In this document: in pieces, positions 8,452 to 63,871 of the stretch | Numbering within the stretch: the stretch's first letter is position 1 | Layout of the letters: each line of letters begins with the position of its first letter | Virus record (IMG/VR): IMGVR_UViG_3300045996_002337 | Coordinates: 186,001 to 250,000 of that record | Reading direction: 5' to 3' (one strand) | Length of the DNA: 64,000 nucleotides | The notes under the pieces: model-generated | What the model saw: the letters and a program-made list of their open reading frames with translations, nothing else | What the model was told of the DNA's origin: nothing | Databases searched by the model: none | Position numbers and translations under genes: made by a program

Positions 8452-9126
8452 TTATTTATGGGGCCAGAGAAGATCAAAGTTTCCCGCCATCACCCTATCA
8501 CAGGCCGCGGATCGCCCAGTTCGATGATCCTTTACAAGATTATCTTGAAAGCGGTACGTTCGAATTTTATCGCCACGTTCGCCACTTCCAACCTGTGCCT
8601 TGCGATCAGCTGCCAGCTCCAGGAGCTGACCATTTCGGGCAACGGAATTCAGGCGCACCATTATTTCTGTTTTGGCTTCGTTCAGAGAATTTTCACGTGA
8701 GCGGCACTGCGCTGTCACAATTTCACTTGATGGAATGTGCGTGATGCGACACGAATTTTGGTGCTTGTTTCTATGCTGGCCTCCAGCACCCGTGCCAGAG
8801 TACCATTCTATCTTGAAGTCACGCTCATTGAAGGTGACTCGTTTGATCTCTCCTGGATGGATGATTGCCACCGTGACGGTCGAGGAGTGTACCCGTCCCC
8901 GTCTCTCGGTTGGCGGTATGCGCTGAATCCGGTGTCCGCCTGGCTCGTTGTTGAGCTCTGACAGATCCTCGCCGGTTACCTCAATGCTGAGTTCGCGAGA
9001 ATCAATCAGGCGGGTAGTTCAGCCGACGCGTTGCGCGTGGGCGATGTAGGCTTTAGCCAGGTCCTTCACGAACAGCTTGCTGTCCTCTCCGCCTTCGGCG
9101 GCTCGAATCTCAATAATGCGTTTCAT
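8452..9126 (-). CDS. RF1-like class-I peptide chain release factor (224 aa) containing an in-frame TGA at codon 36 (9019-9021)
   Basis: SD GGAG and ATG at 9126: MKRIIEIRAAEGGEDSKLFVKDLAKAYIAHAQRVG-TGA-TTRL...GGHRIQRIPPTERRGRVHSSTVTV...GAGGQHRNK...RSRENS...IRTYRF. PxT and GGQ motifs are intact and in one frame. Confidence 0.85.
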
Positions 9127-9752: not shown

Positions 9753-9879
9753 TGGTGGTGGCGGAAGGAATCGAACCTCCCCTGGCCGTTTATGAGTCGG
9801 ATAACCAATTACGGACGGTTGAGCTAACAACGAAAGGTGCAATCGATGTTTACCGTGCTGTCCACTACACTACGCCACC
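9753..9879 (-). ncRNA. tRNA/Y-RNA hybrid: tRNA acceptor, D and T arms with CCA, and a ~50-nt Ro60-helix-like domain in place of the anticodon arm
   Basis: GGTGGCG/CGCCACC-A-CCA, D arm, T loop TTCGATT; insert contains TCG-TTG[TTAGCT]CAA-C-CG and GGTTATCC/GATTGC, shared with the Y-like family. Confidence 0.6.
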
Positions 9880-11244: not shown

Positions 11245-11319
11245 TGGTGGTGATGGTGGGAATCGGACCCACGACACAGAGCTTATGAGACTCCTGCTTA
11301 ACCATTCAGCTTCATCACC
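11245..11319 (-). tRNA. tRNA-Met/Ile2(CAT)
   Basis: CT-CAT-AA; CCA. Confidence 0.8.
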
Positions 11320-13334: not shown

Positions 13335-13410
13335 TGGTGGGCCCTCACGGAATCGAACCGTGTCCTTCGGAGCTTCAATCCGACGTACGCACCAGCTATA
13401 CCAAAGACCC
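13335..13410 (-). tRNA. tRNA-Phe(GAA)
   Basis: TT-GAA-GC, CCA. Confidence 0.85.
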
Positions 13411-13418
13411 ATAAATTT

Positions 13419-13494
13419 TGGCTGGCCACCGCGGTCTCGAACCGCGAACCCCTGGTTTTGGAGACCAGTGCTCTGCCAATTGAGCTAGTGACCA
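13419..13494 (-). tRNA. tRNA-Trp(CCA)
   Basis: CT-CCA-AA, G73, CCA. Confidence 0.9.
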
Positions 13495-13498
13495 ATAT

Positions 13499-13735
13499 CT
13501 ATTTCTTCAACGCTCTAGAAGTCGAGGTCGCCTTGAGAGCTTAGTCCAACCGCCGTACGAACGTTGAAGAAATAGTCCATTGCCACCGAGGTGGTACGAG
13601 AATCCTCTTCCGAGAATCCTCCAATGGACTAAAACATATCCATCCCTTTTCGCGCTCGGCAGTCTGAAGAGTACTCGACTGATTCATGGCGGTCCATCTT
13701 GTTTATATCCCGCGAGATGTAGCAACGCGGTAAAA
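13499..13735 (-). ncRNA. structured non-coding leader (several long hairpins)
   Basis: 13-bp IR tatttcttcaacg/cgttgaagaaata, 10-bp IR tagtccattg/caatggacta, direct repeat cgagaatcct x2. Confidence 0.4.
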
Positions 13736-13744
13736 ATTGTCTCT

Positions 13745-13790
13745 AAAAAACAACCCAGGGTCCAATCTTTCGAGAGGACCCTGGTTCTTG
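13745..13790 (-). terminator. intrinsic terminator (attenuator) upstream of tRNA array 1
   Basis: AACCAGGGTCC-loop-GGACCCTGGGTTG followed by TTTTTT on the minus strand. Confidence 0.85.
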
Positions 13791-13808
13791 TGAGTGTGGA
13801 AGAAGCGC

Positions 13809-13946
13809 TTAGCTTACTTTCCTCCCTAGAACCAGGGACGTATCGGTGATAATCTCATCATTTCGCTTATTCTCGAAACGCACAGAGACGTCTTGGCTTT
13901 GTTGCCAATGCATTTCTGTTTGTTTAAAGAAGGTTACGAAGTTCAC
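13809..13946 (-). CDS. putative 45-aa leader peptide (attenuator)
   Basis: SD AGGA then GTG; MNFVTFFKQTEMHWQQSQDVSVRFENKRNDEIITDTSLVLGRKVS*; its 3' part GTCCCTGGTTCT is complementary to the terminator 5' arm. Confidence 0.55.
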   Translation of the reverse strand: MNFVTFFKQTEMHWQQSQDVSVRFENKRNDEIITDTSLVLGRKVS

Positions 13947-17666: not shown

Positions 17667-17950
17667 CACATCACCTCGAAAGCAAAGTTGAGCAGTTCTT
17701 GGGCACCCCATAGATCGAAGGGCACAGGGTCAGGGGTTTCACCGCAGCAGAACTCTTCGAGCTCGGCAGGTGAGAGCTTCGAGAGGGCAATGTCCACCGC
17801 CTTGATGTCAGCTTCAGCATAACGCTCCTCGACGAGATGCATCACGTGGTTAACAACCGATTCCTCGGTCACCCCACGGTAAATGACGCCACTGTCGTAG
17901 GCAATCTCAATGACGGCCTTGATGAGCGATGGGTACTTGTGTGGGATCAT
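17666..17950 (-). CDS. hypothetical protein
   Basis: 94-aa ORF coupled to both neighbours. Confidence 0.6.
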   Translation of the reverse strand: MIPHKYPSLIKAVIEIAYDSGVIYRGVTEESVVNHVMHLVEERYAEADIKAVDIALSKLSPAELEEFCCGETPDPVPFDLWGAQELLNFAFEVM

Positions 17951-19014
17951 TTTGCAAGCTCGTTTGGAATGAAGGCGCGGCCGGCCCGCCAGTGTTTTTG
18001 CGTTTGAACATGATTGGCGCGAACGAACTTTGCCACGCTCTTGCGAAAATCGCCGTAGCTAAACTCACCAGCAATCCGAACCACGTAACCTTCGTCCTTT
18101 TCAAAGTCTAGACTCTTCTCAATGTCACGAACAGTTTTCTCATCCCACATGCCATCATAAAGAACTGGGACAGGTGTTAGGCCGAGCAGCTCACACCAGA
18201 CGATGGTGTCATCCCACCTCAAGCAGCGGTTCTTTGCATCCCAAATGCTAAAGCACATGAAGTATGAAGGCAGGGCGGTGTAGTGAATCGAGTGCTCGGC
18301 CCAGAGGTTCTCGCCGCAAACACGCCAGCCTTCAGGAAGATTGAAGCAGACGTTCTCGATCAGGAACTTCTTGACCCAGGCCCGGTCTTCGCCACCACGG
18401 CTGTCAATCGAACGTGCGTGAATGTGACCATCGCTGTACGCGGTGGTGTTCTCACCGTCCATCTTCTTGGTGATGACTACACGGCGACCTTCAAACTGCG
18501 AGCAGTCCTTCAGGGCTTTGTCGTCGTCTTGTTTTCCAGGAGACCAGGGGAGGTGGAACGTCCGCTCGTACTTGACGTACGAGGTAAACAGATCCAACGC
18601 TCCACCCGCGGCCAGAACTTTCTGTACGGACTCGTCAAAGAAGAGCTCGCCCTTGGCGCGGCGACCGTCAGCAAGTACTGGGTTTCCCCATTTGTCGTAC
18701 TGATGGTCAGGGTAGAAGTGCGGAGGAACCACGATCTTCGTGATGCCTGCTGCTTGACGCACGTCCTCGACCGAGTAGAACGTTTTCTCGCAGAGAAGAT
18801 GATGCAGCTCGCACACGGTCGCGCCGTTCTCGAGATAGTAGCCACCATCTGGCCACAGCCGCCGCTCGAGAATGTGATGCGCGTCGAGCTTGCCCTCAGG
18901 GGTTTGCGCTGCAGTGATTCCGCAGAAAACGCACTTGTGACCATCTCGAAGGAACACACCTTCGCGGAAGTTGTCTCGAGTAAGTAGTTTGGGCTCTGCC
19001 ATGTTATTCTCCAT
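17947..19014 (-). CDS. HNH-domain / RNA ligase fusion protein
   Basis: N-terminal CVFC...DAHHI...NGATVC-x-x-HH; C-terminal ligase motifs KMDGEN, CGEN, EGYVVR, K-F-V-R. Confidence 0.85.
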   Translation of the reverse strand: MENNMAEPKLLTRDNFREGVFLRDGHKCVFCGITAAQTPEGKLDAHHILERRLWPDGGYYLENGATVCELHHLLCEKTFYSVEDVRQAAGITKIVVPPHFYPDHQYDKWGNPVLADGRRAKGELFFDESVQKVLAAGGALDLFTSYVKYERTFHLPWSPGKQDDDKALKDCSQFEGRRVVITKKMDGENTTAYSDGHIHARSIDSRGGEDRAWVKKFLIENVCFNLPEGWRVCGENLWAEHSIHYTALPSYFMCFSIWDAKNRCLRWDDTIVWCELLGLTPVPVLYDGMWDEKTVRDIEKSLDFEKDEGYVVRIAGEFSYGDFRKSVAKFVRANHVQTQKHWRAGRAFIPNELAK

Positions 19015-33617: not shown

Positions 33618-34712
33618 TCAGGTCAGAGCACCAGCAATTGCTTCGCGGCGAGCCTGCTCAATTGCCTGACCGAGCTCCTTACCTGGAGGAATATCAGGAA
33701 AATCTGCAGCTTTAACTGGCTTTGTAACTGAGGCTGCCCTCCACAGATCAAAAGAGTTCACCTTAGGTGACTCACCAATCGATGGCATCAGTTCAACTGC
33801 TTGCACCAAATCATCGAAGGTAGAGCCTTCGCTCCATGCCTTCGCTGCTTTCAGTAAGTTGAAGACGTCATCAACGGTGCGTTCCATGGTTCGAACCCGA
33901 TTCACATTCTCAAACAGCGTTCGCGTGCGAGTGTCAGCGCTGACACGAACAGTGGTCGAAGACGGAACAGCTGCGAGCGCAGTGTGAAACATGACGCGTT
34001 CTGCTTCATCAACAAACACCGAGACTACTGACGCAGCGGCGATGACAGATTTCAGTCGAGCTGCATCAATGTGACCATACAGGCCTTCGAAGAACAAAAC
34101 GTTTTCATCGCAGTGCATGGCCTTCATGAGCCAGAAAAAGCGCCACGGTGTTTCTTCTTGGAAGACCTTGTGGAGCTCTGCCCAGAAGCGTTCAGCGGGC
34201 AGTTGATTCAGATCGCCGTTCTCGACCATGCGCTTCGCCAAATCCATCGTTTCGGTTGCAACACTGAAGTTGTCGTAGCGTGCAAAGAAGCGGGCTAGCC
34301 GCACCACCCGCAGTGGATCTTCACCGAAGGCAGCAGAGACGTGGCGCAGAACGCGCGCTTCCAGATCTTGCTGTCCACCCCAAGGATCGATGATTTTGCC
34401 GTCCTCATCCTCAGCCATCGCATTGATGGTCAGGTCTCGTCTCGACAGGTCGTCGGCCAGGGTCACACCGTCGGTTTCAACTGCGAAGCCGAGGTAGCCC
34501 TTGCCCGTCTTGCGCTCGGTTCTAGCAAGGGCGAACTCCTCACCACGTTCGTTCAGAAACACGGGGAAATCCGCACCCACCTGCTGAAAGCCCATGGCAA
34601 TCATTTGCTCGGGCGTGGAGCCGACAACGACGTAGTCAAAATCCTTCGGATCTCGCCCCATCAGCTTGTCACGAACTGCACCACCGACCGTGTAGACCTG
34701 ATATGTTTTCAT
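33618..34712 (-). CDS. cca: tRNA nucleotidyltransferase (class II CCA-adding enzyme)
   Basis: VGGAVRD...[45 protein letters not shown]. Confidence 0.92.
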
Positions 34713-34748
34713 AGATGCATTATACACTGCCCACTCTAGGTTGTAAAC

Positions 34749-37905: not shown

Positions 37906-38841
37906 TTAGATAAGGTCAGCCTTATTTATTGTCAGCGGTTCCACAGTTCGGAATTCTTTTTCAGTCGCCTGATAGAAAGTCCAGCTGCCCAGTTCAATGC
38001 AGGTAAGGGCACACCAGCCCCGGACCTTTATGTTGCCGCTGTAGCTCTGCTCACCGAATGAACCGTACGCACATGTATCGATGTTCGTCTGTCCGACAAT
38101 CGTGACTGGCCGCTGCATGATGGTGTGACCACTGATGATGTGCGACAACTTGTCGTTGAAGACAGCAGTGCCGTTTCGCAGCTTCAATGTGCGAATGATC
38201 TTTTCGCGGTTGCTTAGGTCGGCACGATAAAAATCGTAGAACAGATGGCGGCCCCACAGAAAAGAATCACCATCCCCGTTCTGCTTGGTCGCCAAGGCGT
38301 GAACCTTCTGCCCATCCGACAGAATTTCATCGGTTATGACGTTGCCTGGCGGCAGTTCGGCGTGGATCACATGGAACTTCTTCCCATCCGGTCGATTGAT
38401 CGTGATCATGAAAGGAAGGTTCTCAACGAAGGTCAGCAGGTCAATCAGCTCCATGTCCTCGTCACTGATCAGTGGCATGTGCTCAACACGCCCAGCTTCC
38501 TTCGCTTCAAGAGCGCGAGAAACGTTCCACGCCTCAGCTCCCCACATGCCACCGTTCTGGAACCAAAATTGCCCCATGTAGCCACCGCGAAACGCTTCAA
38601 GCATCATCTGCTCGTGGTTAGAGAGGACTGCATGGAACCAGGGCTTGCGTAGCAGGGCAAGGCAGCCAAGTGAATCTGGTCCGCGATCGACGAGGTCACC
38701 AACTGAGAACATTCGGTCCTTTGTGGAATCAAATGCAAGGTTCTCAAGCAGGTTCTCGAAGCATGCAAGTGATCCATGCAGGTCACCGATTACGAAGTCC
38801 CTACCATCGTTGTTTGGTTCAAATGTTTTGAGAATTGGCAT
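37906..38841 (-). CDS. metallophosphoesterase (lambda-PP/PphA-like Ser/Thr phosphatase)
   Basis: GDLHG, VGDLVDRGPDS, LSNHE, IHAE, SGHT. Confidence 0.9.
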   Translation of the reverse strand: MPILKTFEPNNDGRDFVIGDLHGSLACFENLLENLAFDSTKDRMFSVGDLVDRGPDSLGCLALLRKPWFHAVLSNHEQMMLEAFRGGYMGQFWFQNGGMWGAEAWNVSRALEAKEAGRVEHMPLISDEDMELIDLLTFVENLPFMITINRPDGKKFHVIHAELPPGNVITDEILSDGQKVHALATKQNGDGDSFLWGRHLFYDFYRADLSNREKIIRTLKLRNGTAVFNDKLSHIISGHTIMQRPVTIVGQTNIDTCAYGSFGEQSYSGNIKVRGWCALTCIELGSWTFYQATEKEFRTVEPLTINKADLI

Positions 38842-56224: not shown

Positions 56225-56332
56225 TGGCTCCCCAACCTGGGCTCGAACCAGGGACCTGCGGATTAACTAGAACACCCGATAAACCAGATGTTCGGTGTCA
56301 GTCCGACGCTCTACCAACTGAGCTATTGGGGA
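56225..56332 (-). tRNA. tRNA-Asn(GTT) interrupted by a 32-nt insertion in the anticodon loop
   Basis: Canonical Asn body; loop reads CTG[ACACCGAACATCTGGTTTATCGGGTGTTCTAG]TTAA; removing 32 nt restores CT-GTT-AA. Confidence 0.8.
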
Positions 56333-56865: not shown

Positions 56866-56939
56866 TGGTTCCTCTAGGTGGAATTGAACCACCGTCAGCC
56901 CCTTATAAGGAGGCCGCTCTACCATTGAGCTATAGAGGC
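56866..56939 (-). tRNA. tRNA-Ile(TAT)
   Basis: CT-TAT-AA; G1.A72 mismatch; CCA. Confidence 0.8.
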
Positions 56940-57481: not shown

Positions 57482-57618
57482 AAAGCATAGAAACAACAAA
57501 AGGCGCTATCGGGAATTCCTGCCCCTGGACCACCTGCAGGATGCCACGAATCGAACGGGCTTGGGTTTATTTCCAATAATAGTAGATAACCGACAACAAA
57601 CGGTTGATTCTATGCTTT
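57482..57618 (-). ncRNA. Y-RNA-like RNA with degenerate T-loop module
   Basis: AAAGCATAGAA terminal stem; CAA-C-CG / TTG-TTG helix; GTTATC/GATAGC; TTCGATT hairpin. Confidence 0.55.
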
Positions 57619-59433: not shown

Positions 59434-59437
59434 ATAA

Positions 59438-59568
59438 AGCAACAAAGGAGCGATAACGAGTCTGCCTTTCGGCGAGGCGGCTGTCCTACCATTAGACTAC
59501 AGCTCATTGAGCCGGCGGGAATCGAACCCACGTTAACTGCTTGGGATAAACGTCATCTATCGGTTGCT
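59438..59568 (-). ncRNA. YrlA-like Y RNA (permuted tRNA module)
   Basis: GCAA-C-CGA...T arm (GTGGG TTCGATT CCCGC), acceptor closed by a loop (CGGCTC AAT GAGCTG), D arm (GTCT AATGGTA GGAC)...GCC-GAAA-GGC...TTG-TTGC. Confidence 0.75.
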
Positions 59569-59760
59569 AATCTTTTCACTCGGCCGGTGCGGTGGCTGAG
59601 GGCTTGGGCCACTTGTTAGGCTCCATTCCCCATGCTGCCCAGCGCTGCGCCCAAGTTGCCCAGTTCGTGGTGTTGTTGCCCGCGCACCGAATCGCACGTA
59701 GGGCCTCTTCCATCGAAGAAGGTTCTGTATTCAGGTCTTCGTTCATGCTGCGTTCCTTAT

Positions 59761-60631: not shown

Positions 60632-60749
60632 TGGTGGGGACTCGTGGGCTCGAACCACGGACCTACTAGATGTCTACTTTCTGCATGGACAATGGGCGCC
60701 GTTCCATGCAGTTTCGCTCTAATCGCTCTACCAACTGAGCTAAGTCCCC
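60632..60749 (-). ncRNA. tRNA-like RNA with a hairpin inserted in the anticodon loop
   Basis: Near-consensus acceptor, D and T arms plus CCA; loop holds a CTGCATGGA/TCCATGCAG hairpin; no clean 7-nt anticodon loop. Confidence 0.65.
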
Positions 60750-61249: not shown

Positions 61250-61260
61250 ATAAAACTAAA

Positions 61261-61321
61261 GTCAACAAAAGATACGGCGAGGGGTTGCCTAATGAATGAT
61301 AACCCTCAACCTACGGTTGAC
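61261..61321 (-). ncRNA. minimal Y-RNA-like RNA (61 nt)
   Basis: GTCAA-C-CG...GAGGGTTATC...CCCCTC...TTTTG-TTGAC. Confidence 0.55.
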
Positions 61322-61326
61322 AAATT

Positions 61327-62444: not shown

Positions 62445-62520
62445 TTTTACCTCTGAATTTTCCTTTTGAGAAGGTGTGCGTTGACAGTTTGGACAGAGCA
62501 ACGCCCAGAAACACATGAGA

Positions 62521-62613
62521 TGTTGAACGACGGGATTCGAACCCGCACATTGCGCCGGTGATTAGCCGGTGCTAAGTATACCAATTCCTCACGTTATGCA
62601 AACACGTTCAACA
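62521..62613 (-). ncRNA. tRNA-like RNA, anticodon AAT, 9-bp acceptor, 12-nt insert before the D arm
   Basis: TGTTGAACG/CGTTCAACA; CT-AAT-CA loop; T arm intact; no CCA. Confidence 0.55.
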
Positions 62614-62663
62614 AAATCAACCATGCGCGGCTACCAATTACGCCACGAGTGCATTAAAACAAG

Positions 62664-62794
62664 AGCAACAAAGGGCGATAACGAAAAGCCTTTCGGCGAG
62701 CCGGCTGCCTTACCACTTGGCGACTATCAATTGCTCGATAGGTAGGATTCGAACCTACGTTTAGCTGGATAGATAATCATCATCAACGGTTGCT
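62664..62794 (-). ncRNA. YrlA-like Y RNA (permuted tRNA module)
   Basis: GCAA-C-CG...T arm (GTAGG TTCGAAT CCTAC), 7-bp acceptor capped by GCAA tetraloop, D arm (GCC AAGTGGTAA GGC)...GCC-GAAA-GGC...TTG-TTGC. Confidence 0.8.
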
Positions 62795-62801
62795 AATTCT
62801 G

Positions 62802-63781: not shown

Positions 63782-63871
63782 TGGTGGATGCTGTCCGAAT
63801 CGAACGGACCTTAATGCTCAAAGCATTCATAAGCAAGTAACTTATGCCCACTCGTACCAACTACCACATCC
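63782..63871 (-). tRNA. degenerate Ser-like tRNA (anticodon ACT)
   Basis: CATAAG-TTACTTG-CTTATG arm, long variable hairpin, T arm, CCA; bulged acceptor. Confidence 0.45.

What the first reader, a model, noticed from the sequence alone, without database searches (positions are those of the whole stretch)
9753..9879. tRNA/Y-RNA hybrid with inverse (non-permuted) YrlA topology and a real CCA end
Seen: ordinary tRNA acceptor, D arm, T arm and A-CCA, but the anticodon region carries the same two strands that form the termini of the Y-like RNAs in this window (ATTGCACCTTTCGTTG and CAACCG...GGTTATCC), here joined by a 6-nt loop, with a compensatory C-G where the others have G.U. A CTCATAA loop lies at its 3' side. 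It is the circular permutation of the YrlA-like RNAs at 59438 and 62664. Inference: a possibly aminoacylatable or CCA-bearing Ro60 tether, or an evolutionary intermediate between tRNA and YrlA. I am not aware of this topology being described.
Basis: partly seen in the sequence, partly recalled or inferred. Interest (0 to 1): 0.85.

Follow-up and report, generated by a model that had tools for sequence, protein, structure and literature searches.

The report
tRNA carrying a Ro60-type Y-RNA arm
A huge phage encodes a 127-nt RNA that is a complete tRNA frame (open acceptor stem, encoded CCA, CAU anticodon-type loop) with a closed Y-RNA-type arm grafted into its anticodon stem; the same design recurs beside Ro60 genes in many uncultured phages and appears to be an undescribed, non-permuted form of the bacterial Y RNA YrlA.

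Summary
Window 9879→9753 (minus strand) is a tRNA frame: a 7-bp acceptor stem, D and T arms, and encoded A-CCA. A 52-nt insert splits the 5′ strand of its anticodon stem. The insert is a hairpin-closed copy of the stem that forms the termini of four ordinary Y-like RNAs in the same window.

MFE folding does not predict the arm. Covariation does: across 32 homologues 93% of cells pair, against 66% in shuffles, and 25 of 27 pairs show double changes.

A covariance model separates these hybrids (63–119 bits) from plain tRNAs (≤44 bits). It finds 47 more in Ro60-encoding viral loci, all on the Ro60 strand, the strongest within about 1 kb of the gene and some in tandem. The source phage (349,660 bp) has an intact Ro60 gene 12.9 kb downstream on the same strand, preceded by Y RNAs with the same stem type.

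Tandem hybrids score as YrlA when read across their junction, which fits the "dimeric tRNA" origin model. The 2014 YrlA survey discarded candidates overlapping tandem tRNA genes.

Ro60 binding, processing and aminoacylation are untested. Acceptor stems do not track the anticodon-like triplet, which argues against cognate decoding. Verdict: a new variant of a known kind.

The parts
9753..9879 (-). Whole tRNA/Y-RNA hybrid (127 nt including the encoded CCA)
   Evidence: Sequence. R1 covariance model 100.4 bits, the only such hit in the window. Identical copy in IMG/VR contig 3300045996_002337.
9873..9879 (-). Acceptor stem, 5' strand GGTGGCG (RNA nt 1-7)
   Evidence: Pairs 7/7 with 9757-9763. All 7 acceptor pairs covary in the family, 94.6% paired. 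Orthologue L098 has GGTGATG/CATCACC, two compensatory pairs.
9855..9870 (-). D arm GTGT-AGTGGACA-GCAC (nt 10-25)
   Evidence: Direct reading. GG in the loop. The same D arm occurs in L098, L093, L192 and L028b.
9801..9852 (-). 52-nt insert (nt 28-79): A-rich linker TAAACA plus closed Y-type arm plus GGTTAT
   Evidence: Deleting it in silico makes ARAGORN call tRNA-Met(CAT). Intact, the RNA is not called.
9839..9846 (-). Upper helix, 3'-type strand TCGATTGC (nt 34-41)
   Evidence: 8/8 pairs with 9805-9812 in one register only; other registers give 2-4. All 8 pairs covary in 32 sequences.
9832..9838 (-). 3' side of internal loop, ACCTTTC (nt 42-48)
   Evidence: A conserved pyrimidine-rich 7-9 nt loop ending YTTT in both topologies.
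9818..9831 (-). Lower helix GTTG/CAAC closed by the loop TTAGCT (nt 49-62)
   Evidence: All 4 lower-helix pairs covary, 96% paired. Other members close it with GCAA, GAAA or TTCG tetraloops.
9813..9817 (-). 5' side of internal loop, CG-TCC (nt 63-67); together with the preceding C it forms the CCG motif at the position of the Ro60-contact motif GNCGAA(N)G
9800..9812 (-). Upper helix, 5'-type strand GTAATTGG, followed by TTATC (nt 68-80)
   Evidence: GGTTA(T/C)C is invariant in 18/18 aligned hybrids. It is also present in Bxz1 Ro60-adjacent Y RNAs.
9784..9800 (-). Anticodon-type hairpin: C80-C81-G82 / loop A-CUCAUAA-A / C92-G93-G94, then C95-C96 pairing back to G27-G26
   Evidence: Direct reading. 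ARAGORN gives loop CTCATAA, anticodon CAT, after arm deletion.
9764..9780 (-). T arm GGAGG-TTCGATT-CCTTC (nt 100-116)
   Evidence: T stem 98.8% paired in the family.
9753..9763 (-). Acceptor 3' strand CGCCACC, discriminator A, encoded CCA (nt 117-127)
   Evidence: About half of the 32 family members encode N-CCA.
57490..57610 (-). Standard-topology Y-like RNA (Y57); its stem is in exact register with the feature's arm
59436..59570 (-). Standard-topology YrlA-like RNA (Y59)
   Evidence: Rfam YrlA 39.1 bits (GA 69), E = 1.3e-7, full length. The bona fide Bxz1 YrlA scores 32.5 bits.
61259..61323 (-). Minimal Y-like RNA (stem plus loop, no tRNA-like domain)
62662..62796 (-). Standard-topology YrlA-like RNA (Y62)
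   Evidence: Rfam YrlA 21.3 bits. 8/8 upper helix.
11248..11319 (-). Ordinary tRNA(CAU) with acceptor GGTGATG/CATCACC-A-CCA; a possible parent or paralogue of the hybrid frame
   Evidence: Rfam tRNA 60.6 bits; sequence. The acceptor similarity is not specific.

Best explanation
The feature is a non-permuted Y RNA. A tRNA-Met-type scaffold carries a Ro60-type binding arm as a large bulge in the 5' strand of its anticodon stem.

Proposed mechanism:
1. It is transcribed with the neighbouring tRNAs. It starts 5 nt after tRNA-Arg(CCG).
2. It is released in the same way as those tRNAs: RNase P cuts at G1, and the 3' end is trimmed to the encoded CCA. The phage's own CCA-adding enzyme could maintain that end.
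3. The tRNA body folds into the usual L shape.
4. The closed arm presents the same module as the termini of ordinary Y RNAs: a lower helix, an asymmetric internal loop with CCG on one side and a YTTT-rich strand on the other, an 8-bp upper helix, and then UUAUC.
5. The arm binds the phage's Ro60 (gene 12.9 kb downstream, same strand).
6. The RNA then serves as a Ro60 partner whose effector end is a full tRNA mimic with a free CCA end and an anticodon-type loop. It would couple Ro60 to a tRNA-binding factor or nuclease, as YrlA is thought to do.

Shown here: the structure, its conservation and covariation, the family, and its genomic linkage to Ro60.
Inferred: processing, Ro60 binding and the effector.

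Evolutionary corollary: such units in tandem, read from arm loop to arm loop, are YrlAs. They may therefore represent the ancestral arrangement of YrlA.
For: Structure:
- One pairing register gives 7-8/8 pairs in all 15 closed and open copies, with A-U<->U-A and U-A<->C-G swaps.
- On 32 sequences 93.4% of cells are paired, against 66.0% in shuffles (0 of 500 reach it) and 36-50% with slid partners. 25 of 27 pairs show double changes.

Family:
- Homologues occur in at least 6 huge-phage or metagenome contigs, always inside tRNA arrays on the tRNA strand.
- Model R1 gives hybrids 63-119 bits and plain tRNAs at most 44.

Ro60 link:
- The module CCG-N9-15-GGTTAYC occurs at 1.81 per kb in the 1 kb upstream of Ro60, against 0.053 per kb elsewhere.
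- Bxz1 Ro60-adjacent Y RNAs share the layout.
- R1 finds 14 + 29 + 4 hits in Ro60 loci, all 47 on the Ro60 strand. Several are 60-330 nt from the gene, for example L246, L240 and L192.
- The source contig has an intact 542-aa Ro60 (vWA_Ro60 E = 2e-50, TROVE E = 1.6e-28). Two Y RNAs lie directly upstream, one of them with CTGACAAAC-CG-...-TTGG-TTATC / ...ATCTTTT-GTTTGTCAG.

Precedent:
- M. smegmatis YrlA is opened by RNase P and receives CCA in vivo while bound to Rsr (PMC4201824).
- Ro60 mainly contacts the 5' strand, so free ends are not obviously needed (same paper).

Origin:
- Rfam YrlA matches full-length across two tandem hybrids, L257 336-448 at 37.9 bits.
Against: - No experiment: expression, processing and Ro60 binding are all inferred.
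- In this lineage the canonical contact motif GNCGAA(N)G is reduced to (A)ACCG(N). Only the C-G is conserved.
- The arm is thermodynamically weak, -7.2 kcal/mol as an isolated hairpin, and is not in the MFE fold.
- In this lineage the hybrids are not adjacent to Ro60. An HMM search found no TROVE in 156 kb of window plus family loci, and Ro60 is 12.9 kb away.
- None was found in four cultured Ro60-encoding actinophage loci.
- The covariation alignment A5 was fitted to the model, which inflates pairing somewhat.
Confidence: 0.6

Rival explanations
1. It is a working, chargeable tRNA (Met or Ile2, anticodon CAU) with an expansion arm. The arm is tolerated on the ribosome much as a class II variable arm is. 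It serves an accessory purpose, such as recruiting Ro60 to the tRNA or shielding the anticodon stem from host anticodon nucleases.
For: - Complete acceptor stem, A73 and encoded CCA.
- The canonical Met/Ile2 loop CUCAUAA.
- ARAGORN calls tRNA-Met once the arm is deleted.
- Across type-1 members the 7-nt loop keeps U at position 33 in 14/14 and a purine at position 37 in 13/14, with varied anticodons. L096 with GGA also has a Ser-like long variable arm.
- Rfam's tRNA model passes several Ro60-adjacent hybrids at 43-49 bits.
- The genome carries tRNA-repair genes: RNA ligase, CCA-adding enzyme and Thg1.
Against: - Acceptor stems do not track the anticodon-like triplet. L003a against tRNA-Pro gives 4-5/15, L234a against tRNA-Asn 3/15 and L075 against tRNA-Lys 4/15. 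The window's 11/15 to tRNA(CAU) is beaten by two unrelated tRNAs.
- The window copy has an A31.A39 mismatch (or a 9-nt loop) and only a 3-nt variable region.
- Type-2 members (L034, L035, L003b, L258b, L093b) have no anticodon hairpin at all, yet keep everything else.
- An ordinary tRNA(CAU) already exists at 11248-11319.
- U33 and R37 partly reflect how ARAGORN chooses loops.
Confidence: 0.12
2. The arm is a binding site for some other, lineage-specific phage protein. Its resemblance to Ro60-binding stems reflects common descent without retained Ro60 binding.
For: - The lineage's motif departs from GNCGAA(N)G.
- The hybrids and four Y-like RNAs of this phage are scattered in tRNA arrays, 13 to about 67 kb from Ro60, rather than beside it.
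Against: - The Y RNA immediately upstream of this phage's own Ro60 has the same divergent stem type, AAACCG...GGTTATC / ATCTTTTGTTTG.
- UUAUC and the loop geometry are kept exactly.
Confidence: 0.1
3. It is a non-functional chimera: a tRNA gene disrupted by recombination with, or insertion of, a Y-RNA-derived segment.
For: - Standard tRNA finders reject it.
- The fold is not more stable than shuffles, z = -0.94.
- A truncated mini-version of the insert sits in another tRNA, 56332->56228.
Against: - At least 32 members in many contigs show compensatory changes in every helix.
- Orthologue L098 differs by two compensatory acceptor pairs.
- GGTTAYC is invariant.
- Linkage to the Ro60 strand is perfect, 47/47.
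Confidence: 0.07
4. The insert is an intron that is spliced out to give an ordinary tRNA-Met.
For: - Inserts occur at different positions (anticodon stem, anticodon loop, and the D loop in L075), reminiscent of archaeal non-canonical introns.
- The phage encodes an RNA ligase.
Against: - No bulge-helix-bulge geometry at the junctions. The two single-stranded junction segments face each other at a three-way junction.
- At 52 nt it is far too short for a group I intron, and there is no intron hit in Rfam.
- The bacterial-type context (a peptidoglycan-binding YkuD enzyme) makes an archaeal splicing endonuclease unlikely.
- The same module exists as free-ended Y RNAs.
- Excision in type-2 members would not restore a 7-nt anticodon loop.
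Confidence: 0.03

Closest known systems
YrlA (Rfam RF02553; Chen et al. 2014, PMC4201824; structure in Wang et al. 2018, doi 10.1101/312249)
   Same: A Ro60-type stem module (lower helix, internal loop with a C-G-containing motif, upper helix, UUAUC) joined to a tRNA-like body with authentic D and T arms. Phage-encoded and linked to Ro60 genes. Four true YrlA-like or Y-like RNAs with the same stem are in this window.
   Different: - YrlA's stem is made by its 5' and 3' ends; here it is closed by a loop.
- YrlA's acceptor-like stem is a closed hairpin; here it is open.
- YrlA's T arm precedes its D arm; here the order is D then T.
[quoted passage not shown] Here A-CCA is encoded and an anticodon-type hairpin is retained alongside the arm.
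- No Rfam YrlA hit on the feature.
RNase P-cleaved, CCA-tailed M. smegmatis YrlA (Chen et al. 2014)
   Same: After processing it also has an open 7-bp acceptor stem with a CCA end attached to a Ro60-binding stem, and it is recovered with Rsr.
   Different: That RNA is a two-piece molecule made by cleaving a permuted precursor, and its Ro60 stem still has free ends. Here a one-piece, genomically non-permuted RNA is encoded.
D. radiodurans Yrn1 (Chen et al. 2013 and 2014)
   Same: It shows that the orientation of the tRNA-like part relative to the Ro60 stem is not fixed among Y RNAs. Yrn1 keeps an anticodon-arm-like hairpin.
   Different: In Yrn1 the Ro60 stem (made by the termini) takes the place of the acceptor stem. 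Here the acceptor is a real open acceptor and the Ro60-type arm branches from the anticodon stem.
Ordinary tRNA-Met/Ile2(CAU), and class II tRNAs with a long extra arm
   Same: Acceptor, D arm, T arm, discriminator A, CCA and the loop CUCAUAA. An extra helical arm emerges near the 26/44 hinge, as the class II variable arm does from the other strand.
   Different: The extra arm leaves from the 5' strand (between positions 27 and 28), is 52 nt long, and is a protein-binding module. tRNA detectors do not call the RNA.
Dimeric-tRNA origin model of YrlA (Sim & Wolin 2018, as summarised in Wang et al. 2018) and circularly permuted tRNA genes of algae and archaea
   Same: Tandem hybrids next to Ro60 (L257, L234, L258, L209) read across their junction as T arm, acceptor hairpin, D arm. 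That is the arrangement the model derives YrlA from.
   Different: The model assumed ordinary tRNA dimers whose leftover arms happened to pair into a Ro60 site. Here each monomer already carries a complete Ro60-type arm. No circularisation or ligation step is implied.

Membership tests
YrlA (RF02553) | Ro60-binding stem formed by base-pairing of the RNA's own 5' and 3' ends | tested here: not met
   The two strands are joined by the 6-nt loop TTAGCT. The termini form the acceptor stem instead.
YrlA (RF02553) | tRNA-like domain with the T arm 5' of the D arm and a closed acceptor-like hairpin | tested here: not met
   The order is D arm then T arm, and the acceptor is open with A-CCA. There is no YrlA match at the feature even at E <= 10.
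YrlA (RF02553) | GNCGAA(N0-1)G motif on the 5' strand of the stem | tested here: inconclusive
   The feature has AACCGTCCG, so only the C-G is kept. Ro60-adjacent hybrids such as L240 (GGCCGAAGG) have the canonical motif.
YrlA (RF02553) | Encoded within about 4 kb of a Ro60 gene (the criterion of Chen et al. 2014) | tested here: not met
   Ro60 is 12,872 nt downstream on the same strand. The criterion is met by other hybrids: L246, L240, L192, L209, L258 and others.
YrlA (RF02553) | Bound by Ro60/Rsr in vivo | not testable with these tools
   Needs RIP or EMSA.
Y RNA in the broad sense (Ro60-binding module) | Helix, asymmetric internal loop with a conserved C-G-containing 5'-strand motif, helix, followed by UUAUC; conserved by covariation | tested here: met
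   Register test. Covariation: upper helix 8/8 pairs and lower helix 4/4 pairs with double changes. The layout is shared with Bxz1 Ro60-adjacent Y RNAs. The module is 34-fold enriched upstream of Ro60.
Y RNA in the broad sense (Ro60-binding module) | Co-occurrence with a Ro60 gene in the same genome | tested here: met
   Intact TROVE + vWA_Ro60 ORF at L386 13902-15530 on the source contig.
tRNA (RF00005) | 7-bp acceptor stem, discriminator, CCA; D loop with GG; T loop TTCGAnT | tested here: met
   Direct reading. The acceptor and T stems covary in the family.
tRNA (RF00005) | Continuous 5-bp anticodon stem with a 7-nt loop | tested here: not met
   The stem's 5' strand is interrupted by 52 nt between positions 27 and 28, and the 31:39 pair is A.A.
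tRNA (RF00005) | Recognised by tRNA detectors at their thresholds | tested here: not met
   No ARAGORN call. No Rfam tRNA match at the gathering score or at E <= 10. Called tRNA-Met(CAT) only after in-silico removal of the arm.
tRNA (RF00005) | Aminoacylation and decoding | not testable with these tools
   The proxy test was negative: acceptor identity does not follow the anticodon-like triplet.
Intron-containing tRNA gene (archaeal BHB type or bacterial group I) | Bulge-helix-bulge motif at the splice junctions, or a group I intron core | tested here: not met
   Junction geometry read from the sequence: TAAAC and TAT face each other at a three-way junction. The insert is 52 nt. No intron family appears in the Rfam scans.

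The most novel reading that the evidence does not exclude
These RNAs are genuinely chargeable tRNAs that carry Ro60 as cargo. They would link the Ro60 RNA-surveillance ring directly to aminoacyl-tRNA synthetases, EF-Tu or the ribosome during phage infection. Tandem copies of such 'armed tRNAs' would be the ancestral state from which all YrlA-type Y RNAs arose by a shift of processing sites.
Probability: 0.15. Interest if true: 0.92.

Novelty: new variant of a known kind. Interest (0 to 1): 0.72.

Why it matters
Y RNAs and Ro60 are conserved from bacteria to humans, and Ro60 is a major autoantigen. What the tRNA-like half of bacterial Y RNAs binds is still an open question, and so is how Y RNAs arose from tRNAs.

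A natural, recurrent, one-piece RNA that joins a Ro60-type arm to a complete tRNA (open acceptor, CCA, anticodon-type loop) bears on both questions:

1. **Effector.** It narrows the effector question to factors that need real tRNA ends and can be tested directly: RNase P, the CCA-adding enzyme, synthetases and EF-Tu.
2. **Origin.** It provides living examples of the tandem arrangement predicted by the dimeric-tRNA origin model.
3. **Annotation gap.** These genes are missed by tRNA finders, and they were deliberately filtered out of the original YrlA survey. Ro60-linked RNAs in phage tRNA arrays are therefore probably under-counted.
4. **Phage biology.** It adds a component to the RNA-repair and quality-control toolkit of huge phages, which here includes Ro60, an RNA ligase, a CCA-adding enzyme and Thg1 in one region.

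Tried and rejected
- **MFE folding** of the feature does not give the arm and is not better than shuffles. I rejected it as a test and used covariation instead.
- **ARAGORN and Rfam** (gathering and E <= 10) make no call at the feature.
- **Megablast** of the region against deposited phages found nothing. Neighbour-protein tblastn gave only distant hits.
- **The 16-mer with 3 mismatches** was not above chance, so I replaced it with structured patterns.
- **Genome contigs pattern scan:** 4 hits, none in a tRNA context, so they look like chance.
- **Looking for Ro60 in the source contig:**
  - tblastn and a profile HMM on everything held were negative.
  - Two related-loci runs returned only the best 80 of 197 and 395 loci, none of them a target contig.
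  - The lineage-specific helix was absent from Ro60 loci.
  - The question was finally solved by walking the contig with the look-up of encoding contigs.
- **Deposited phages with a closer Ro60:** none closer than 47% identity. No hybrid in four cultured actinophage Ro60 loci.
- **Acceptor-identity test** for cognate charging was negative.
- **Enrichment of YrlA-type D and T stems** in hybrids is only modest and is not phylogenetically independent.
- **Promoter and terminator scan:** nothing above chance.
- **Stop-codon recoding:** no evidence (the JGI gene calls look normal).
- **Reviews:** Sim & Wolin 2018 and Sim et al. 2020 are not held.
Full report
**1. What is at the coordinates**

The window is part of a huge-phage contig: JGI metagenome 3300045996, Ga0456371_00000085, 349,660 bp. 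The window covers record positions 186,001-250,000. It carries 47 ARAGORN tRNAs, all on the minus strand.

Read on the minus strand, 9879->9753 is a 127-nt tRNA frame:
- acceptor GGTGGCG/CGCCACC
- U8-A9
- D arm GTGT-AGTGGACA-GCAC
- T arm GGAGG-TTCGATT-CCTTC
- discriminator A and encoded CCA

Between the D arm and the T arm lie 73 nt instead of about 22. Neither ARAGORN nor Rfam's tRNA model reports it, even at E <= 10.

Nucleotides 28-79 are an A-rich linker followed by a hairpin. The hairpin's two strands are look-alikes of the 3' and 5' termini of four ordinary Y-like RNAs in the same window:
- 57606->57494
- 59566->59440
- 61319->61263
- 62792->62666

The best of these scores 39.1 bits on Rfam YrlA over the full model. 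That is more than the Bxz1 YrlA that lies beside a Ro60 gene, which scores 32.5 bits. Sub-threshold scores are therefore normal for phage YrlAs.

**2. Is the arm real?**

Energy does not show it. The MFE fold lacks the arm and the RNA folds no better than shuffles.

Comparison does. Using only the anchors CAACCG and TTATC, I paired the 8 nt before TTATC with 8 nt upstream of the 3'-type strand. This gives 7-8 of 8 pairs at exactly one internal-loop length in each of 11 closed and 4 open copies. All other registers give 1-7, mostly 1-5. The pair columns show A-U<->U-A and U-A<->C-G exchanges.

The architecture is the same in both topologies:
- lower helix (G)CAAC/GUUG(C)
- internal loop with CG plus 3-4 nt on one side and a 7-9-nt YUUU-rich strand on the other
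- 8-bp upper helix
- then UUAUC

**3. The family**

A signature for the closed stem found true homologues on other huge-phage and metagenome contigs:
- viral contigs: L003 (three copies), L028 and L035 (three copies on one 358-kb contig), L034, L020
- metagenome contigs: L093 (two copies), L096, L098

All lie inside tRNA arrays on the tRNA strand.

L098 is the closest orthologue. Its acceptor GGTGATG/CATCACC differs from the window's by two compensatory pairs.

A covariance model built from 18 units scores hybrids at 63-119 bits and plain tRNAs at 44 or less. It recovers units that were not in the training set. It finds exactly one hybrid in the window.

On 32 realigned units:
- 93.4% of cells pair, against 66.0% in shuffles (0 of 500 reach it) and 36-50% with slid partners
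- 25 of 27 pairs show changes on both sides
- by helix: acceptor 7/7, upper helix 8/8, lower helix 4/4

The alignment was fitted to the model. The hand register test is independent of it.

**4. Anatomy: more than a permutation**

*Type-1 members, including the window.* The arm does not replace the anticodon arm. It is a bulge in the 5' strand of an otherwise intact anticodon stem.
- Window: G27 | C-C-G-A pairs with A-C-G-G-C, where | marks the insert. The loop is CUCAUAA and the 31:39 pair is A.A.
- L192b has CU|CCG / CGG-AG with the same loop CUCAUAA.
- Other members have loops with GAU, GUU, UUU, GCA, UCG, GCU, GGA and UGG.
- L096, with GGA, also has a Ser-like long variable arm.
- With the arm deleted in silico, ARAGORN calls tRNA-Met (window, L098), Lys, Ser, Cys, Pro and so on.

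*Type-2 members* (L034, L035, L003b, L258b, L093b). A 5-bp stem GCGGU/ACCGC encloses the arm and there is no anticodon hairpin. These are the true circular permutations of YrlA.

*L075.* The arm sits in the D loop of an otherwise normal tRNA-Lys(CUU).

**5. Link to Ro60**

- *Motif layout.* The three Y RNAs upstream of mycobacteriophage Bxz1 Ro60 share the 5'-strand layout CCG(A)-N-helix-GGUUA(U/C)C.
- *Enrichment.* In 78 viral Ro60 loci that module occurs at 1.81 per kb in the 1 kb upstream on the Ro60 strand, against 0.053 per kb elsewhere.
- *Hybrids beside Ro60.* Closed-arm tRNA-frame units lie directly beside Ro60 genes: L246 (ends ACCA, about 60 nt before the start codon), L240, L192, L209, L258, L289 and others.
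- *Model hits.* R1 finds 14 + 29 + 4 hits at E <= 1e-8 or E <= 1e-9 in three sets of Ro60 loci. All 47 are on the Ro60 strand, and some are tandem pairs or triples.
- *The source contig.* It encodes an intact 542-aa Ro60 (vWA_Ro60 E = 2e-50, TROVE E = 1.6e-28). The gene is 3.1 kb outside the window and 12,872 nt downstream of the feature on the same strand. Two Y RNAs lie in the 605-nt gap upstream of it. One has the lineage's stem type, CUGACAAAC-CG-...UUGG-UUAUC / ...AUCUUUU-GUUUGUCAG.

Two caveats. In this lineage the canonical GNCGAA(N)G motif is reduced to AACCG(N). The hybrids are also not adjacent to Ro60: an HMM search found no TROVE in 156 kb of window and family loci.

**6. What it most likely does**

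The best-supported reading is a Ro60 partner RNA in a non-permuted format.
- It is processed from the tRNA-array transcript like a tRNA.
- It folds as an L-shaped tRNA body with a free CCA end.
- It presents a Ro60-type arm.

There is precedent. M. smegmatis YrlA is opened by RNase P and receives CCA in vivo while associated with Rsr, and Ro60 mainly contacts the 5' strand (PMC4201824). A Thermus phage Ro60 with its Y-like RNAs assembles with host PNPase (PMC12135203).

The same region of this genome also encodes an RNA ligase, a CCA-adding enzyme, a metallophosphoesterase, an RF-1-domain protein and Thg1. That suggests an RNA repair and surveillance hub. This last point is inference.

The chargeable-tRNA reading keeps some support: U33 and R37 are retained, the loop is CUCAUAA, and CCA is encoded. 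Three things weaken it:
- type-2 members lack an anticodon hairpin
- the window's anticodon arm is irregular
- acceptor stems do not follow the anticodon-like triplet

The intron, pseudogene and 'other protein' readings are each disfavoured for the reasons given in the rival explanations.

**7. Comparison with what is known, and novelty**

YrlA is defined as a circularly-permuted-tRNA-like RNA whose termini form the Ro60 stem. [quoted passage not shown] 2018). The feature fails those defining points, so it should not be filed as a YrlA. It does share the Ro60 module and the tRNA-like body, so it works like one.

Rfam's YrlA model matches full-length across the junction of two tandem hybrids (L257 336-448). 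That is the geometry from which the dimeric-tRNA origin model derives YrlA.

Chen et al. 2014 discarded all candidates overlapping annotated tandem tRNA genes as false positives. That would have removed this class.

I found no description of a closed Ro60-type arm inside an open tRNA in the searchable literature. Two reviews could not be read.

I rate it a new variant of a known kind.

**8. Limits**

- Everything functional is inferred from sequence.
- The collections were sampled through pattern scans with caps, not searched exhaustively with the model.
- The counts near Ro60 include related contigs and are not independent events.

Noticed in passing
window 56228-56332 (-): A 105-nt tRNA (Rfam 55 bits) has a hairpin of about 33 nt inserted in its anticodon loop. 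The loop of that hairpin reads CCGAACATCTGGTTTATC. This looks like a collapsed mini-version of the Y-arm insert: the AACATC linker plus GGTTTATC, without the stem. The anticodon is ambiguous; a CTA reading is possible.
   Followed up: partly
window 60635-60749 (-): A 115-nt tRNA-like gene (Rfam 48.5 bits with permissive filters; ends ACCA) has a different long hairpin (CTGCATGGA...TCCATGCAG) inside the anticodon loop. It is unrelated in sequence to the Y arm.
   Followed up: no
window 62520-62650 (-): An odd tRNA-like element lies directly after the YrlA-like RNA Y62. It has a D arm and a T arm but an irregular middle of about 60 nt containing TTGTTGAAC and AATTGGTATAC. Weak scores: Rfam tRNA 22 bits, R1 24 bits. 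It may be a degenerate hybrid.
   Followed up: no
window 57490-57610, 59436-59570, 61259-61323, 62662-62796 (all -): Four standard-topology Y-like RNAs are scattered in the second tRNA array, roughly 62-67 kb from the Ro60 gene. Two are YrlA-like with a GCCGAAAGGC hairpin, one has a degenerate T arm, and one is a minimal stem-loop.
   Followed up: partly
window 11248-11319 (-): An ordinary tRNA(CAU) (Rfam 60.6 bits) is missed by ARAGORN. It is the only conventional Met/Ile2-type tRNA I saw in the window.
   Followed up: partly
L386 13902-15530 (source contig record 181,253-182,881; 3.1 kb before the window start): An intact Ro60 (TROVE + vWA_Ro60) with two Y RNAs in the 605-nt gap upstream (about 13408-13536 and 13546-13866). 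It is followed by a NADAR-domain gene and, 2.5 kb further on, a Thg1-family (tRNA-His guanylyltransferase-like) gene.
   Followed up: partly
window 17947-19014 (-), 33618-34727 (-), 37906-38841 (-), 8452-8871 (-): An RNA-repair and translation-rescue style gene set: RNA ligase (PF09414), CCA-adding enzyme (PolyA_pol head), metallophosphoesterase, and a 139-aa RF-1-domain protein (ArfB-like).
   Followed up: partly
L075 358-485 (-): A variant in which the same Y-type arm is inserted in the D loop of an otherwise normal tRNA-Lys(CUU) ending G-CCA. The arm has therefore been placed at at least three different sites in tRNA frames.
   Followed up: partly
L252 2268-2600 (+); L257 270-531; L234 2349-2612; L258 4832-5220; L209 3532-3808: Tandem arrays next to Ro60. 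L252 holds standard YrlA units whose 3' strand abuts the next unit's 5' strand by 3-4 nt. The other loci hold tandem hybrids. The two arrangements are register shifts of each other.
   Followed up: partly
L020 9517-9639 (+), 368-kb contig: A closed-arm unit that also carries GCCGAAAGGC hairpins on both sides of the arm, as the window's YrlA-like RNAs do. It is cut by the end of the stored locus, so its 3' half could not be read.
   Followed up: no
window 63782-63871 (-) and 56866-56939 (-): ARAGORN calls a tRNA-Ser with anticodon ACT and a tRNA-Ile with anticodon TAT. These are unusual anticodons for bacterial systems.
   Followed up: no
window 59504-59585 (-): A weak Rfam tmRNA match (22 bits, GA 47) overlaps Y59. 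It is explained by Y59's tRNA-like domain and is not a tmRNA.
   Followed up: yes
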